64,000 nt of DNA from Vicugna vicugna. Its lineage: Eukaryota. The stretch covers positions 3,039,679 through 3,103,678 of the forward strand of contig MU062090.1 of the NCBI GenBank assembly GCA_013265495.1, in the 5' to 3' direction. How positions within the stretch are numbered: position 1 is the first letter of the stretch; every line of letters begins with the position of its first letter. Made by a program: the position numbers and the translations under genes. Below are positions 32,793 through 41,192 of this stretch, piece by piece. Under the pieces are notes generated by a model, which saw only the letters and a list, made by a program, of their open reading frames with translations, made no database searches and was not told the origin of the DNA.

Positions 32793-32991
32793 ATGAGTGA
32801 AACAGGGAAAAAAAGTTCCTCAGAGGGAGAAAAGAAACAAAAGTCCAGACTTCATTTGTCGACAAATTCCTCAGGGGCTCAAAACTCAAGTCCCCCAAAG
32901 CTGAAAGTGGAAAAGAGAGCAATGAATGACCTTAAAACAAGTGATTTTCAAATCAGTGAGGAGACACTGAAGGCAGCCTCCTTAGACCCTG
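32793..32991 (+). pseudogene. LRRC31: LRRC31 exon 1 coding part
   Basis: MSETGKKSSSEGE...NDLKTSD matches human MSQTRKKTSSEGE...NDLKTSD. The middle segment matches human only in a shifted frame (QTSFVDKFLRGS...AESGKESN). The homologous donor appears to be the weak G|GTCAAC at 32991/32992; a second donor CAG|GTATTT lies at 33009/33010. Confidence 0.85.
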
Positions 32992-34141
32992 GTCAACTTC
33001 TGACTGCAGGTATTTCTTTATTTTTTAAAACAATGTTCTCCCCTAAAGAGATCACATGGGTTAAATTAAACCTAATGCTTTGAGTCTCTGTTCTAAACAT
33101 TTATTTTGTTTCTTAAATTATTTAAATAATTTGCTCATTTTACTTTTTAATTATCAAAAGTAATATAATATTACAAAAAGGTTTAGAGAAGATAACTTAC
33201 TTCCTTTCATTCTAACACAAATGGTCATTTCTTCAAGCTTCTTTTCAGTCTTTTATTCATATGCCTGCATTTGTGGCCAATCAACCAGTCAACTAACACT
33301 GAGCACCTACTCTGTGCCGGCCACTGTTGTTAGAAATATAGCCAAGAAAAACAGGACCCTGTGTACACGAAGAACCAAAGGCAGGCATAATTTCAGTGTG
33401 ATAAGTCATACAAAGAAAAATAAAGCAGACTAAGGAGACAGTGATGGGTGAGTTGGGGGTGCTATTTTAGATGAGGTTGGAAGGAAGGGGTCTCTGATTT
33501 GTTGGCATTTGAGCAGAGATCTGAATCAAGTCAGCCATGTAGAATGGATGAGTGAAGCCAGCCACATAGGTATTTGTGGGAGCAGCTTTCCAGGCAAAGG
33601 ATCTGTAAATGCAAAGGCCCAAGGTGGGAGTGAGCCTAGGGTGCTTGAGAGTGAGCCAGGATATCAGGGATGCTGAAGCAGGATGAGAGATGGACGAGAG
33701 TCTCCTACTGAGACTATCAGAGAGGTAGCTGAAGCCAGACGGGAAGTCATTTGCACTGTTATAATAGCTTATAAAGCCCTCCTGAGCTTACACGGAGACG
33801 TAATCCCATTTCTGGGACACATTACTGCTCAGCTCTCACAGTGCCACGTGATGTTCAGACGCCTAATTTTAACAGTGGCATAATATTCCATTACATGCAT
33901 ATGCTATCATTATGTAAGTTCCTTTTTTGCCCTTTAGTGAATATCTTTGGCTTTCCCTCTCCCCTATTATCTTCTTCACTGCATTTCAGGTATTTTTAGT
34001 ATAAATTCCCAGAGCAGAGATTATAATTTCAAGGGTTATGAAAATAAATATTACCAATTCTCTCTCTAAAGTTATATGTCATATGCAATGCCAGCAATAT
34101 GTTATCAATTAGATTAAACATATTTTTTAAACACTTGGAGC

Positions 34142-34270
34142 TTTTTTCTTTTTGGTGGAGGGAGGTAATTGGGTTTATTTATTTATTTTTGGTGGAGGTA
34201 CTGGAAATTGAACCAAGGACCTCATGCCTACTAAGCATGTACTCTACCACTTAAGCTATACCTTCCCCCC
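34142..34270 (-). mobile_element. tRNA-derived camelid SINE
   Basis: Reverse complement of the same family sequence. Confidence 0.85.
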
Positions 34271-34699
34271 AAACATTTTAAACTTTTATGCAAACATACA
34301 AAAGAGAGAACCATATAAGGACTCCCATGATCACTTCTCTCTAACGATTATCAATCAATCTTGTTTCATTTACACCCACCCTCATTTCCCTTGGTATTTG
34401 CACCAAATACTCAAAATAATATCATTTCACCATTAAGCAGATTGAATATATTTTTGGAAATAGAAAGCTAAGAAGTCTGCCTTTAAAGGAGACAGTCTAC
34501 CAGAAAGTTGTTGGTATTTGTTCTAAAGTACGTCTTCGAGCTTCGAGAACATGGTTAATGAATACCTATAACCATGATTAAATTAATAGTGCACGACCGG
34601 CCAGCTGGTTATCCCAGCTGGGTGACACCGGCCGCTTAAGCCATGCGTTGCTTCTCTATTTCCATTTCTTCTCAAATTCAGTGGCTCCTGGAGTCACGT

Positions 34700-35450
34700 T
34701 AATCCTGTCCCACAGTTGGCTCTGGGACCTTGTTCTGCCTCTCCATGGCTATCCTGGCTTTCCTTGTCTCTTGCCTGGACCACTGCCACCACTTCCCAAC
34801 TGGTTTCTCTGCTTGTAGTCTTGCTCTCTTTCCAACCTGTCCTCCACACTGCCTCCGGGTCCTCTTTCTAAACCACAGACACCATGATGTCTCTCATTTG
34901 CTTAAAATCCTTCAGCGAGTCTTTCTTGCCTTGAAGAGAAAGTCTGTACCCTTAAGCATGGTCGTCAAGGCATTTGTGATAGGTTGAACATCTCTTCATG
35001 ACCTCTGCCTTTCCCTAACCTCACATTCATCCTCTGTCCTGACATTCTGATACTTGCCATTTCTTGAACTGGTCACGTTCTGCCAAAGTGGTTCCCTGTG
35101 CCTAGAAACACCTTTCCTTGTGTTGCCACACTCCCTCTGCTCTCCTTCCCCGTTCATCTCTCCCTTATGTCCACCCACCTCACTGACTCCCACTCATCCT
35201 TTAAGGTGCAATTTATCCACCACTTTCACTTGGAAGCTTGCTGAGAGCCACCCACCAGACCTGAGGTACTCACTGTCACTACCAGCGGTCACGCTGCACC
35301 CGTTGCATGGCTCCACCATTGTACTTCCCTCTGTGCTGTGACCATCACTCTCTTGTCGGTCTCCTCCACTGGACAGATAGCTCCTTGACAACAGGAACTT
35401 GTTATCTTGGTTCCCGGACAGCACCACCTATGCAACAAACATGTAATAGC
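34700..35450 (+). mobile_element. L2 LINE 3' region
   Basis: Pyrimidine-rich L2 text (GACCACTGCCACC...CATTTGCTTAAAATCCTTCAG...). Confidence 0.7.
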
Positions 35451-36241
35451 GTGTTATGAGAGCGTTGGGACTTTTGGTTGTGAACAACAGAATCCAACCC
35501 CTACAGGTTTAGCTTGCAGAAGAGCCCGATGAGAAGATACTACTTAGCTCACAGGGTCACCTGGAGAAGCAAGAGCTTGCTTCAGTGGTAATGCAGCCAG
35601 AAAAGGCCCCAAGTCGCTCCACAAAACTGCTCATGTGTGGTCACTTCGCACCCCCCACAGAGAACCAGCCCTCCCACCTCAGCCAGCCTGTAGCAGCTCT
35701 GACTCATCTGTTTGATATTTTGAGCTGTGACATAAATATCCTTTGAAGAAAGGGTTTCATAGATTAAAAAAAAGAAGAAATATATGGTCTGTAAGGAGAG
35801 GTCCAGGGGCTTCATAAATTGGTACTTATATTTATACTTAGGTGTTTTAATAAAGATTTATCACACTGATTTATTTTGGTAATTGAGGAACTGTAAAATT
35901 AATATTCAGTCACTCAGTCAGTTATTTGTTCATTCACCCAATATTTACAAAGTATCCTTCATGTAAAAGGCACTGCAGAGTTCCATCTTCATGACAGGCC
36001 TCGGTAAGTTTAAGACACTATGCTCCTAAGAAATGAACCAGGCAGGAATTATAGTTTCCATTTTATAGATGAGTAAATCAAGGCTCAGAGAAGCTAAGTG
36101 ACTTGCTTACCTGATGAGCCCACAGTTTGAAACAGGTCTTTCAACTGTGCTGCTTGGACTTGCCAATCATATCAAATATTATAGAGCACCCAAGCAGTGT
36201 GTGGTCTGAGAAGAGACTTCTGAATCTGTCAGGTTGTGGGT

Positions 36242-36631
36242 TGTTGGGCTGCACCCCGCCGGCCTGCAAGCCTTGTAGCTGCCTGGCCTTAAGACCGAAG
36301 AAAGAGCCCGGAGACAGTGAGAGAGACATCAGTGGTTCATTGGTTAGGGGACCTTACACAAAGGTCCTGGAGTGACATCCCACCGTGTGCAGCAGCCAGC
36401 CAGCAGAAGCAGCAGTCTTCGCTTCTTGGGAGACAAGGACGCTACTATTTATAGGGAGAATTGAGGTGAGGTGGGCTCATCAGGCACTAATTAAGCCCTA
36501 TAATTAAGAGGATTGGATTCTCATGTGAGTGTAGCTAAGACTGGTTGAGCAGGGGATGCACAGAGAGCCAGAAGACAGTCATCTTGAGTGACCTGACCAT
36601 GCATAGGTCATTGGTGGTGACCTTTGAGAAA
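36242..36631 (-). mobile_element. ERV solo LTR
   Basis: TG...CA ends and a reverse TATA (TATTTATAGG). Confidence 0.6.
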
Positions 36632-39794: not shown

Positions 39795-39811
39795 GTGAGC
39801 GGAATTCGGAA

Positions 39812-40288
39812 TGTTACCGGAGGCAAGTTCATGTACCTGCTCCACTATGAGGCCAAACAAACGGAAACATTGAGGTTTGGAGCAAAGAAAGGTTTACTGC
39901 AGGGCTGAGCAAGGAGGATGAGGCAGCCTGTGCCCAAGAAAATCCCAAACTCCTCGAAGGGTTTCAGCAAAGCATATTTAAAGGCCAGATAAGGGGGGTG
40001 GGGGTCTCAGGGTACGTGATCAGCTCGTGCACAATTCACTGATTGGTTGATGTTGAGGTAACAGGGCAGCCAACACTATCAACCTCCAGTAGCCAGAAGG
40101 TCTGGGGGCTACATAATCTCAATCATCAAGTAGTTAACTTCTTCCTTTTGGTGGTGGTTGTAAGCACCTGAAAAACTCAGGAAACATACATGAGATACTA
40201 TTATGGGTACTTCAGAAAGGAGCTACAGCAGAGGGTATGGGGGAGAGATCTGACCCTGGAAGGCCCCACAGGGTCCTGCTTGGTTACA
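39812..40288 (-). mobile_element. ERV1 solo LTR in LRRC31 intron 4
   Basis: TGTTAC...GTTACA ends; same family as 56102-56345. Confidence 0.8.
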
Positions 40289-40499
40289 AGAGGAGTCCTT
40301 CTCAGGAAAAAATGTGATGACGCCCATGAATGGAGAGCTTGGGAGTCAAAGATGGCTGTGTCTTCTCTTACCCTGAATTGAAAGAGTGGCTCCCTCCGTC
40401 CCAGGTCACACGAAGTTGTACTCCCCCTCCTGCTGCCCTAACTTTCACACCCAGCATCTTTTCTTTACTGAGTTGTTCTTTGGATTTCCTTCCTTCCGG

Positions 40500-40667
40500 G
40501 TCAGTTGCTGCCTATGCTGCAAAACCTTGAAGTACTTGATCTTTCTACTAACGGAAACATCGGTGGCAGTTTCAATAGTACTGCTCAGGGATTAAAAAGT
40601 ACCTCAAACTCGAAAGTCTTGAAATTACATTCATGTGGATTATCACAAAAGAGTGCCACAGTACTGA
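40500..40667 (+). pseudogene. LRRC31: LRRC31 exon 5 remnant (168 nt, open frame, acceptor AG>GG)
   Basis: (G)[55 protein letters not shown]. The polypyrimidine tract ends ttccGG (40498-40499) instead of AG. Donor gtgagt at 40668. Confidence 0.92.
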
Positions 40668-41110
40668 GTGAGTTAGCGATGGCTGACGTTTATACATAAT
40701 TTTATTTTCTATTTAATTTTTTAAGCTGTTGGGAAATACAACAAAATATGAACAGTGGTTATGTTGAGGAATAAGATTATGGGTGATTTACATCTTCTTC
40801 ACATTTTATTTATTTTCTATGTCCTTTACAGTGCGCATATACCTTCATGATTACAAAAATAACCTTCTAAAAACAACTGGCTCTGAAAAGGCCAGGATAT
40901 TTTAGGTTTGAGAGAGATACAGGGCAAAATAAAAGTTTCTGTGCTACTAAAGCTCTCCATTTTCCTCTTAACTTTTGAAAATGCCAGTATTATTTTCTGC
41001 TTAGTAGCAGGAAGGAATTGATCCTGAAAAAAAGAACCTACCCCCTGTCCGCCCCTCTCCTGCCTACCACCTTGTAATACGTCAGAAAGGGATTTTGACC
41101 CTCTTTGTCG

Positions 41111-41192
41111 ATGCTGTTTTAGACACTTGTGTGAGCTGAGAAAACTAGACAAGGTGCTGGGCAGAGGGCCTGAAGACTCCTCAGGGTTGGCA
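41111..41192 (+). pseudogene. LRRC31: LRRC31 exon 6 remnant (truncated)
   Basis: tttgtCG|ATGCTGTTTTAGACACTTGTGTGAGCTGAGAAAACTAGAC AAGGTGCTGGGCAGAGGGCCTGAAGACTCC matches human DAAFRYLGELRKLD(LSCN)KDLGGGFEDS. Acceptor is CG, there is a 1-nt and a roughly 12-nt deletion, and homology stops near 41192. Confidence 0.8.

What the first reader, a model, noticed from the sequence alone, without database searches (positions are those of the whole stretch)
32793..41192. LRRC31 is a dead gene here (lineage-specific gene loss) while neighbouring LRRIQ4 is pristine
Seen: exon 4 has a 2-nt deletion near 39685 and a TGA at 39722; exon 5 and exon 6 acceptors are mutated; exon 6 is frameshifted and truncated. 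All five LRRIQ4 exons next door are perfect, so poor sequence quality is an unlikely explanation. Known: human LRRC31 is an epithelial LRR protein reported as IL-13-induced in oesophageal epithelium and reported to restrain DNA-break repair. Inference: a unitary pseudogene in this probably camelid lineage, which could matter for foregut epithelium or DNA-damage biology. I cannot say whether this loss is already published.
Basis: partly seen in the sequence, partly recalled or inferred. Interest (0 to 1): 0.8.

Follow-up and report, generated by a model that had tools for sequence, protein, structure and literature searches.

The report
LRRC31 is a dead gene here
In this artiodactyl (most likely camelid) genome the epithelial and DNA-repair-modulating gene LRRC31 is a wreck at its normal chromosomal place: five of its nine exons are deleted and the other four are damaged, while the neighbouring gene LRRIQ4 is intact, so this is an ordinary but well-documented natural gene loss.

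Summary

- **Exon 4:** a 2-nt deletion at 39685|39686 and a TGA at 39722-39724.
- **Exon 5:** acceptor AG>GG at 40498.
- **Exon 6:** acceptor AG>CG at 41109, a 1-nt deletion, and truncation at 41191.

Alignment to the deer, donkey, pilot-whale, seal and elephant LRRC31 loci adds more.

- **Deletion J1 (38428-38437):** 4-10 kb of orthologous DNA is missing, with exons 2 and 3.
- **Deletion J2 (41187-41192):** 12-23 kb is missing, with the rest of exon 6, exons 7-9 and the stop codon.
- **Exon 1:** +5 and +4 nt insertions.
- **Exon 6:** a 12-nt deletion.

Spliced together, the four remnants would stop at codon 117. LRRIQ4 is intact: 5 exons, 561 codons, all GT-AG.

A 60-nt stretch across J2 is held by 17 DNA runs under five organism labels, so J2 is not an assembly artefact. 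A tree places the window outside ruminants plus whales within Artiodactyla. Pig shows no special affinity, so a camelid is the likely source.

Remnant exons evolved at about the neutral rate (ratio 1.13, against 0.67-0.70 in intact lineages), so the loss is old. I could not test sharing with Old World camels or the absence of a second copy. No paper searched reports this loss. Interest is modest.

The parts
32793..32991 (+). LRRC31 exon 1 remnant. The ATG at 32793 is kept. There is a +5 nt insertion at about 32827-32831 and a +4 nt insertion (AATG duplication) at 32921-32924, net +9, so the ORF stays open but about 31 codons are read in another frame. The donor GT is kept at 32992-32993, but the site reads gtcaac where outgroups have gtaagc or gtaaac.
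   Evidence: tblastn gives two HSPs in different frames. Five-species nucleotide alignment.
38428..38437 (.). Deletion junction J1. The orthologous DNA missing here is 4.0-10.1 kb in deer, donkey, pilot whale, seal and elephant, and it holds LRRC31 exons 2 and 3.
   Evidence: Collinear blastn chains. Alignment of both flanks. No homologue of exon 2 or 3 anywhere in the window.
39629..39794 (+). LRRC31 exon 4 remnant. Acceptor AG and donor GT are kept. There is a 2-nt deletion between 39685 and 39686, an ancestral-frame nonsense codon TGA at 39722-39724, and a shifted-frame stop at 39778-39780.
39811..40290 (.). About 480 nt present only in the window inside intron 4. It is an interspersed repeat, with a 77% identical copy at 56138-56334.
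   Evidence: Gap in all blastn chains. MAFFT shows a 485-nt window-specific insertion. Self-blast.
40498..40667 (+). LRRC31 exon 5 (40500-40667, 168 nt). The reading frame is open and the exon is 76-85% identical to orthologues. The acceptor is mutated AG>GG (40498-40499), and the last exon base is G>A (40667) in front of the retained donor GT.
41109..41191 (+). 5' part of LRRC31 exon 6 (41111-41191). The acceptor is mutated AG>CG (41109-41110). There is a 1-nt deletion at 41116|41117 and a 12-nt deletion at 41148|41149 that removes the LSCN codons of the repeat. The exon ends at the J2 junction.
41187..41192 (.). Deletion junction J2, with TGGC microhomology. The orthologous DNA missing here is 11.8-14.4 kb in donkey, deer, seal and pilot whale and 23 kb in elephant. 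It holds the 3' part of exon 6, exons 7, 8 and 9, the stop codon, and 0.8-1 kb beyond it.
   Evidence: A 60-nt stretch centred on it is held at 1.00 by 17 DNA runs under 5 organism labels.
42365..54429 (-). LRRIQ4, intact. Its five coding exons are 54429-53407, 49397-49224, 47993-47855, 46824-46628 and 42517-42365. The CDS is 1686 nt (561 codons plus stop), all splice sites are GT-AG, and AATAAA follows directly after the stop. Its 3' end lies about 1.15 kb from J2.

Best explanation
**What it is.** This is the orthologous LRRC31 locus, lying tail to tail with LRRIQ4, and it has decayed into an unprocessed pseudogene. Two large deletions with short microhomology at their junctions removed exons 2-3 and everything from mid exon 6 to beyond the stop codon. 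The microhomology fits end-joining rather than recombination between repeats. The four surviving exon pieces carry four frameshifting indels, one in-frame 12-nt deletion, one nonsense codon and two destroyed splice acceptors.

**Consequence.** No LRRC31 protein can be made from this locus. Even if the remnants were spliced together, the reading frame stops at codon 117, with about 20 residues of leucine-rich-repeat sequence. The animal therefore lacks LRRC31 unless another copy exists elsewhere.

**Shown:** the lesions, the synteny, the intact neighbour, and the reality of junction J2 in independent runs.

**Inferred:**
- The loss is old, on the order of 20-40 million years. The remnant exons have evolved at about the neutral rate and have collected small indels at the intronic density.
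- It therefore probably dates to around or before the split of camels and llamas.
- The loss was tolerated because LRRC31 is under weak constraint in mammals generally.
For: **Orthology and synteny**
- Retained exons match LRRC31 of many mammals.
- The window is collinear with the LRRC31-LRRIQ4 loci of deer, donkey, pilot whale, seal and elephant, except for the two gaps.

**Lesions**
-.

**Controls**
- LRRIQ4 is intact.
- There are no N runs in the region.
- The 31-mers spanning J2 are unique in the window.
- The two sampled J2 words are held at 1.00 by 17 DNA runs from at least 8 samples, 6 studies and 5 organism labels.
- The 2-kb stretch 39300-41300 is held at 0.74-0.84 by 15 DNA runs under 4 labels.

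**Age**
- The window-branch substitution rate in LRRC31 exons is 44/496 = 0.089, against 807/10311 = 0.078 in non-exonic DNA, a ratio of 1.13.
- The same ratio is 0.67-0.70 in the four lineages with an intact gene.
- It is 0.68-0.75 for LRRIQ4 exons in all five lineages, including the window at 0.73.
- There are 5 small indels in about 620 nt of exon, against 5.7-11.5 per kb in flanking introns.

**Weak constraint**
- Pairwise pN/pS among intact species is 0.30-0.66.
Against: - pN/pS on the window branch is 0.44 (33 nonsynonymous, 21 synonymous). That is no higher than the background, and taken alone it would suggest a shorter neutral period. With 54 substitutions the test has little power.
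Only junction J2 is confirmed in independent data, and by just two sampled words.
- Organism names are coded, so sharing across camelid tribes is not shown.
- The rest of the genome was not searched for another LRRC31 copy.
- Three RNA runs hold the J2 words, so the remnant or the opposite strand is transcribed. A non-coding role is not excluded.
Confidence: 0.9

Rival explanations
1. Assembly artefact: the gene is intact in the animal, and the assembly collapsed or mis-joined the locus and introduced small errors.
For: Large deletions can result from mis-joins. The best holder has only 0.84 of the sampled words of 39300-41300. I obtained no read pile-up.
Against: - Junction J2 is held at 1.00 in 17 DNA runs of at least 8 samples and 5 organism labels.
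- The lesions are of many kinds: two deletions, five small indels, a nonsense codon and two acceptor changes.
- They are confined to LRRC31, while flanking introns and all of LRRIQ4 align normally.
- The remnant exons show a neutral-like substitution rate, which errors would not produce.
Confidence: 0.02
2. A recent or polymorphic loss: the dead allele is confined to one species or population, and an intact allele still segregates or exists in close relatives.
For: pN/pS on the window branch (0.44) is not raised over background. Contigs show presence, not absence, so an intact allele in the same runs is not excluded.
Against: - At least ten independent lesions have accumulated.
- Small-indel density in the exons equals that in the introns.
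- The exon substitution rate is at the neutral level, against 0.67-0.70 of neutral in intact lineages. The lower 95% bound still implies that roughly 20-40% of a branch of about 60 million years was neutral.
- The pseudogene configuration is held under eight organism labels in all.
Confidence: 0.05
3. Not unitary: a functional LRRC31 copy (a segmental duplicate or retrocopy) lies elsewhere in the genome, and this locus is only the discarded copy.
For: Only 64 kb of the genome was visible. The tools offered no search of the whole assembly.
Against: - LRRC31 is single-copy at this syntenic place in every locus fetched.
- None of the about 120 listed LRRC31 proteins is more than 86% identical to the window's exon 5, so none comes from this lineage. 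This is weak evidence, because the same database also failed to return this lineage's LRRIQ4.
Confidence: 0.06
4. The remnant has been kept as something else: a transcribed non-coding RNA, or a short N-terminal peptide of up to 116 residues from exon 1 onward.
For: - The ATG is retained.
- The two exon-1 insertions sum to +9, so that ORF stays open.
- Exon 5 keeps an open frame.
- Three RNA runs hold the J2-spanning words, and RNA runs hold 0.13-0.17 of 39300-41300.
Against: - The remnant exons evolve at the neutral rate.
- The acceptors of exons 5 and 6 are destroyed.
- The RNA signal may be read-through from LRRIQ4 on the other strand, whose poly(A) signal lies 1.15 kb away.
- A one-in-three chance explains a second indel restoring the frame.
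Confidence: 0.07

Closest known systems
LRRC31 of other mammals (for example deer P0150, donkey P0122, harbour seal P0104, elephant P0138)
   Same: It occupies the same chromosomal place, tail to tail with LRRIQ4. It has the same exon architecture of 168-nt phase-1 exons, each encoding a pair of ribonuclease-inhibitor-type leucine-rich repeats. Exon 5 is 76-85% identical at protein level.
   Different: Five of nine exons are deleted. The other four carry frameshifts, a nonsense codon and lost acceptors. No full-length product is possible.
Classical unitary pseudogenes of mammals (unprocessed, at the ancestral locus, with functional orthologues in other lineages), as catalogued by Zhang et al. 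2010 (PMC2864566) and Sharma et al. 2018 (PMC5865188)
   Same: Introns and synteny are retained, there are multiple independent inactivating mutations, substitution in the exons is neutral-like, and orthologues are intact in outgroups.
   Different: This particular loss is not in the text or held supplements of those papers. The 'no other copy' criterion is untested here.
LRRC31 of baleen whales (minke P0011 and humpback P0153, both labelled LOW QUALITY PROTEIN by NCBI)
   Same: The same gene carries frame-breaking lesions in coding exons in another cetartiodactyl group.
   Different: All nine exons are still present in the whales. The lesions are few, differ between the two species, and none is shared with the window. 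That decay looks younger and independent.

Membership tests
Unitary (unprocessed) pseudogene | Lies at the ancestral syntenic locus with intron-exon structure retained | tested here: met
   The window is collinear with five orthologous LRRC31-LRRIQ4 loci. Introns 1, 4 and 5 are alignable at 70-86% identity.
Unitary (unprocessed) pseudogene | Open reading frame destroyed by mutations that cannot be spliced around | tested here: met
   Exons 2, 3 and 7-9 are deleted, and half of exon 6 is lost. Exons 1, 4 and 6 carry frameshifts, there is a TGA at 39722-39724, and two acceptors are lost. The conceptual splice product stops at codon 117.
Unitary (unprocessed) pseudogene | Functional orthologue in related lineages | tested here: met
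   Full-length LRRC31 is annotated in more than 100 mammals, including pig, ruminants, horse and carnivores. Exons were verified in the deer, donkey, seal and elephant loci.
Unitary (unprocessed) pseudogene | No functional paralogue or second copy in the same genome | not testable with these tools
   Only the 64-kb window is available. Protein database searches returned no protein of this lineage at all, for either LRRC31 or LRRIQ4.
Unitary (unprocessed) pseudogene | Lesions present in independent sequence data, not only in the assembly | tested here: inconclusive
   Junction J2 is met (17 DNA runs, 5 organism labels, 2 sampled words).
Unitary (unprocessed) pseudogene | Relaxed constraint on the remaining coding sequence | tested here: inconclusive
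   The exon to non-exon substitution ratio is 1.13, against 0.67-0.70 in intact lineages, and indel density equals that of the introns. Both support relaxation. pN/pS of 0.44 is not above the background of 0.30-0.66.
Processed pseudogene (retrocopy) | Intronless copy with a poly(A) tail away from the parental locus | tested here: not met
   Exon remnants are separated by orthologous introns and sit at the parental locus.
Camelid (Tylopoda) origin of the window | Branches within Artiodactyla outside Ruminantia plus Cetacea and is not a suid | tested here: inconclusive
   An ML tree on 8306 aligned sites gives (window,(deer,pilot whale)) with UFBoot 100, rooted with elephant. Exon 5 is only 76% identical to pig LRRC31. 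A remembered pig PRE-1 SINE motif is absent. No camelid sequence could be fetched for a direct comparison, and peccaries are not formally excluded.

The most novel reading that the evidence does not exclude
LRRC31 is reported to suppress DNA double-strand-break repair by binding Ku70/Ku80 and ATR. Under this reading it was lost in the common ancestor of all living camelids and is independently decaying in several whale lineages. Its repeated loss in large, long-lived or stress-exposed cetartiodactyls would then be a 'less is more' change that raises DNA-repair capacity, rather than neutral decay of a dispensable gene.
Probability: 0.08. Interest if true: 0.65.

Novelty: new member of a known kind. 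Interest (0 to 1): 0.3.

Why it matters
Animals of this lineage would be natural knockouts of a gene for which two functions have been proposed in human cells. [quoted passage not shown] The other is restraint of DNA-break repair (PMC12872989, citing D'Mello 2016 and Chen 2020).

That gives a comparative handle on whether the gene is dispensable. It also tells anyone studying these pathways, or annotating these genomes, not to expect an LRRC31 product.

The practical weight is limited. LRRC31 is weakly constrained in mammals (pN/pS 0.3-0.66 here) and shows frame-breaking lesions in whales too, so its loss is not very surprising. No phenotype can be tied to it from sequence alone.

Tried and rejected
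- **Read laying.** No read pile-up or RNA view was possible. I used a 60-nt junction-centred sequencing-run search instead.
- **Exact look-up of window ORFs.** I looked up seven ATG-started ORFs that span J1, the exon-1 insertions, the exon-4 deletion, the exon-5 acceptor and LRRIQ4 exon 1, hoping to reach contigs of relatives. None is in the collection.
- **LRRIQ4 protein searches.** These were meant to find a camelid LRRIQ4 whose 10-kb flank would carry the LRRC31 remnant. Only a handful of LRRIQ4 orthologues came back and none was camelid. So the absence of camelid LRRC31 is no evidence either way.
- **Pig locus and horseshoe-bat locus.** Neither is on record.
- **Species identity by SINEs.** A remembered PRE-1 motif gave 0 hits, which is weak. 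A search for the camelid Vic-1 consensus gave no usable sequence. The repeat finder found no families.
- **Dating by pN/pS.** The background ratio is too high for the test to have power, so I rejected it as a clock and used exon-to-intron rate ratios and indel density instead.
- **Literature.** LRRC31 with 'pseudogene', 'gene loss' or 'camel' gave nothing relevant. The held supplements of Sharma et al. 2018 hold no LRRC31.
- **Remnants of exons 2, 3 and 7-9.** I considered that they survive in diverged form. blastn at E=10 finds only chance 11-14-mers.

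
Full report
**What is in the window**

The window is mammalian DNA with three N runs, all upstream of 28141. On the plus strand between 32793 and 41192, translated searches with LRRC31 of deer (P0150), donkey (P0122), seal (P0104), rhinoceros (P0115) and pig (P0215) find only four pieces of the nine-exon gene:
- exon 1 at 32793-32991;
- exon 4 at 39629-39794;
- exon 5 at 40500-40667;
- the first half of exon 6 at 41111-41191.

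The reference proteins came from a profile-free search with the exon-5 translation and a follow-up search that returned named LRRC31 proteins from more than 100 mammals.

I fetched the LRRC31 loci of fallow deer (L001), donkey (L002), pilot whale (L003), harbour seal (L004) and Asian elephant (L005). I mapped their exons and aligned each retained exon with its flanks.
- **Exon 4:** it lacks 2 nt between 39685 and 39686. It also has TGA at 39722-39724 where the others have CAA (CGA in the whale). The shifted frame stops at 39778-39780.
- **Exon 5:** the acceptor is GG at 40498-40499 instead of AG.
- **Exon 6:** the acceptor is CG at 41109-41110 instead of AG. The exon has a 1-nt deletion at 41116|41117 and ends abruptly at 41191.

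- **Two large deletions.** Collinear blastn chains of the window against the five loci are unbroken from about 24.7 kb to beyond LRRIQ4, except at two points.
  - At 38428-38437 (J1), 4.0-10.1 kb of orthologous DNA is missing. It holds exons 2 and 3.
  - At 41187-41192 (J2), 11.8-14.4 kb is missing (23 kb in the elephant). It holds the rest of exon 6, exons 7, 8 and 9, the stop codon, and 0.8-1 kb beyond it.
- **Junction structure.** Alignments of both flanks show short microhomology at each junction: TGGC at J2 and a GCAG/CTG-type overlap at J1. This fits end-joining deletions.
- **No diverged remnants.** Nucleotide searches with the missing exons at E=10 find nothing in the 64 kb.
- **Exon 1.** It has a +5 nt and a +4 nt insertion (about 32827-32831 and 32921-32924). 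Together these keep the ORF open but put about 31 codons in another frame.
- **Exon 6.** It also has a 12-nt deletion that removes the LSCN codons of the repeat.
- **Exon 5.** Its last base is G>A.

Spliced together, the four remnants read to a stop at codon 117.

**The neighbour**

LRRIQ4 lies tail to tail on the minus strand. Its five coding exons (54429-53407, 49397-49224, 47993-47855, 46824-46628, 42517-42365) give a 1686-nt CDS with one terminal stop. All four introns are GT-AG, and a poly(A) signal follows directly after the stop. Its 3' end is about 1.15 kb from J2.

**Real or artefact**

Two run searches stand in for it.
- The 2-kb stretch 39300-41300 is held at 0.74-0.84 of sampled words by 15 DNA runs under four organism labels.
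- A 60-nt stretch centred on J2 was chosen so that 26 of its 30 31-mers cross the junction, and all are unique in the window. Seventeen DNA runs from at least eight samples, six studies and five organism labels hold it at 1.00, as do three RNA runs.
- Only two words were sampled, so this is good but not exhaustive support.

With the variety of lesions and their restriction to LRRC31, an assembly artefact is very unlikely.

**Whose genome**

An ML tree on 8306 sites alignable in all six sequences gives (window,(deer,pilot whale)) with UFBoot 100, rooted with elephant. The window is therefore an artiodactyl outside ruminants plus whales, which leaves camelids or pigs and peccaries.
- The pig has a full LRRC31 (P0215).
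- The window's exon 5 is only 76% identical to the pig's, no closer than to other orders.
- A remembered pig SINE motif is absent.

Other agents' notes on this genome call it alpaca- or llama-like. I could not check that. Camelid is the best reading.

**Age**

On the window's branch, the retained LRRC31 exons changed at 44 of 496 determinable sites (0.089), against 807 of 10311 (0.078) in non-exonic DNA. That is a ratio of 1.13.
- The same ratio is 0.70, 0.67, 0.69 and 0.68 on the deer, whale, donkey and seal branches, where the gene is intact.
- It is 0.68-0.75 for LRRIQ4 exons on all five branches, including the window at 0.73.
- Five small indels lie in about 620 nt of exon, a density like that of flanking introns at 5.7-11.5 per kb.

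Both measures point to neutral evolution over a large part of the branch. Allowing for Poisson error and for faster synonymous sites, this is roughly 20-100% of the branch.

Against this, pN/pS on the branch is 0.44 (33 nonsynonymous, 21 synonymous), no higher than the 0.30-0.66 seen between intact species. That test has little power here.

My estimate is a loss some tens of millions of years old, probably around or before the split of camels and llamas. This is inference. The eight organism labels that hold the pseudogene configuration exceed the number of living species in either camelid tribe. That hints at sharing across tribes but does not show it, because the labels are coded and may include subspecies or hybrids.

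**What is known**

PMC12872989 summarises the reported functions:
- induction by IL-13 and control of kallikreins and barrier function in oesophageal epithelium (D'Mello 2016);
- inhibition of DNA repair through Ku70/Ku80 and ATR (Chen 2020).

No paper in the library links LRRC31 with pseudogenisation, gene loss or camels. The held supplements of the mammalian gene-loss screen of Sharma et al. 2018 do not list it. Large automatic catalogues may already flag it, but I could not consult them.

**Side finding**

NCBI labels LRRC31 of minke whale and humpback as low quality. In their loci (L006, L007) the coding lesions are these:
- **Minke:** a 1-nt insertion in exon 1 and an insertion of about 310 nt in exon 5.
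- **Humpback:** 1-nt indels in exons 3, 4 and 6.
- **Pilot whale:** a 2-nt deletion in the canonical exon 2, which its gene model avoids with another exon.

None of these is shared between species or with the window. The gene seems prone to decay in cetartiodactyls, which tempers 'lineage-specific' and lowers the surprise.

**Verdict**

It is a new example of a familiar kind of event. Its depth in the camelid tree, the absence of another copy, and any phenotype remain open.

Noticed in passing
L006 (minke whale), L007 (humpback), L003 (pilot whale): LRRC31 carries frame-breaking lesions in cetaceans too. Minke has a 1-nt insertion in exon 1 and an insertion of about 310 nt splitting exon 5 (L006 14054-14367). 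Humpback has 1-nt indels in exons 3, 4 and 6. Pilot whale has a 2-nt deletion in the canonical exon 2 (L003 about 16105-16270). None is shared between species, which suggests independent decay.
   Followed up: partly
L003:12509-12685 and window 35529-35748: The pilot whale gene model (P0191, 596 aa) uses an 'exon 2' that is homologous to plain intron 1 sequence in deer and in the window (84% identity). It does not use the canonical exon 2, which is frameshifted in that whale.
   Followed up: partly
window 53564-53888 (LRRIQ4 exon 1) versus P0232 and P0231: The cattle and oryx LRRIQ4 proteins match the window over residues about 180-287 only in a different reading frame from the window's open frame, and return to it afterwards. 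Porcupine LRRIQ4 (P0224) matches the window's frame throughout. Bovid LRRIQ4 may carry compensated frameshifts; the oryx entry is labelled low quality.
   Followed up: no
window 41160-41219 and 39300-41300: Three RNA runs (X16 and X17, labelled 'reproductive system metagenome', and X42) hold the words spanning deletion junction J2. RNA runs hold 0.13-0.17 of the words of 39300-41300. Either the LRRC31 remnant is transcribed, or LRRIQ4 transcripts read through on the other strand.
   Followed up: no
window 39811-40290 and 56138-56334: A stretch of about 480 nt in LRRC31 intron 4 is absent from deer, donkey, whale and seal. It has a 77% identical copy about 16 kb away on the same strand, so it is an unidentified interspersed repeat inserted on this lineage.
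   Followed up: partly
window 41037-41051: Intron 5 of the LRRC31 remnant lacks about 350 nt that are present in deer, donkey, whale and seal. This is a further lineage-specific deletion inside the dead gene.
   Followed up: no
window 38429-38434 and 41187-41192: The right-hand sides of both large deletion junctions begin with TGGCAG. This is probably chance microhomology, but the coincidence is unexplained.
   Followed up: no
window 18245-18415, 20710-20885, 28009-28140: Three N runs of 171, 176 and 132 nt lie upstream of LRRC31, in the region where SAMD7 is expected.
   Followed up: no
(protein database): Two searches with LRRIQ4 queries returned only a handful of mammalian LRRIQ4 orthologues, although the gene is called in every locus fetched. 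The word index seems to miss this repeat-rich family, so absences from that tool are not evidence for it.
   Followed up: no
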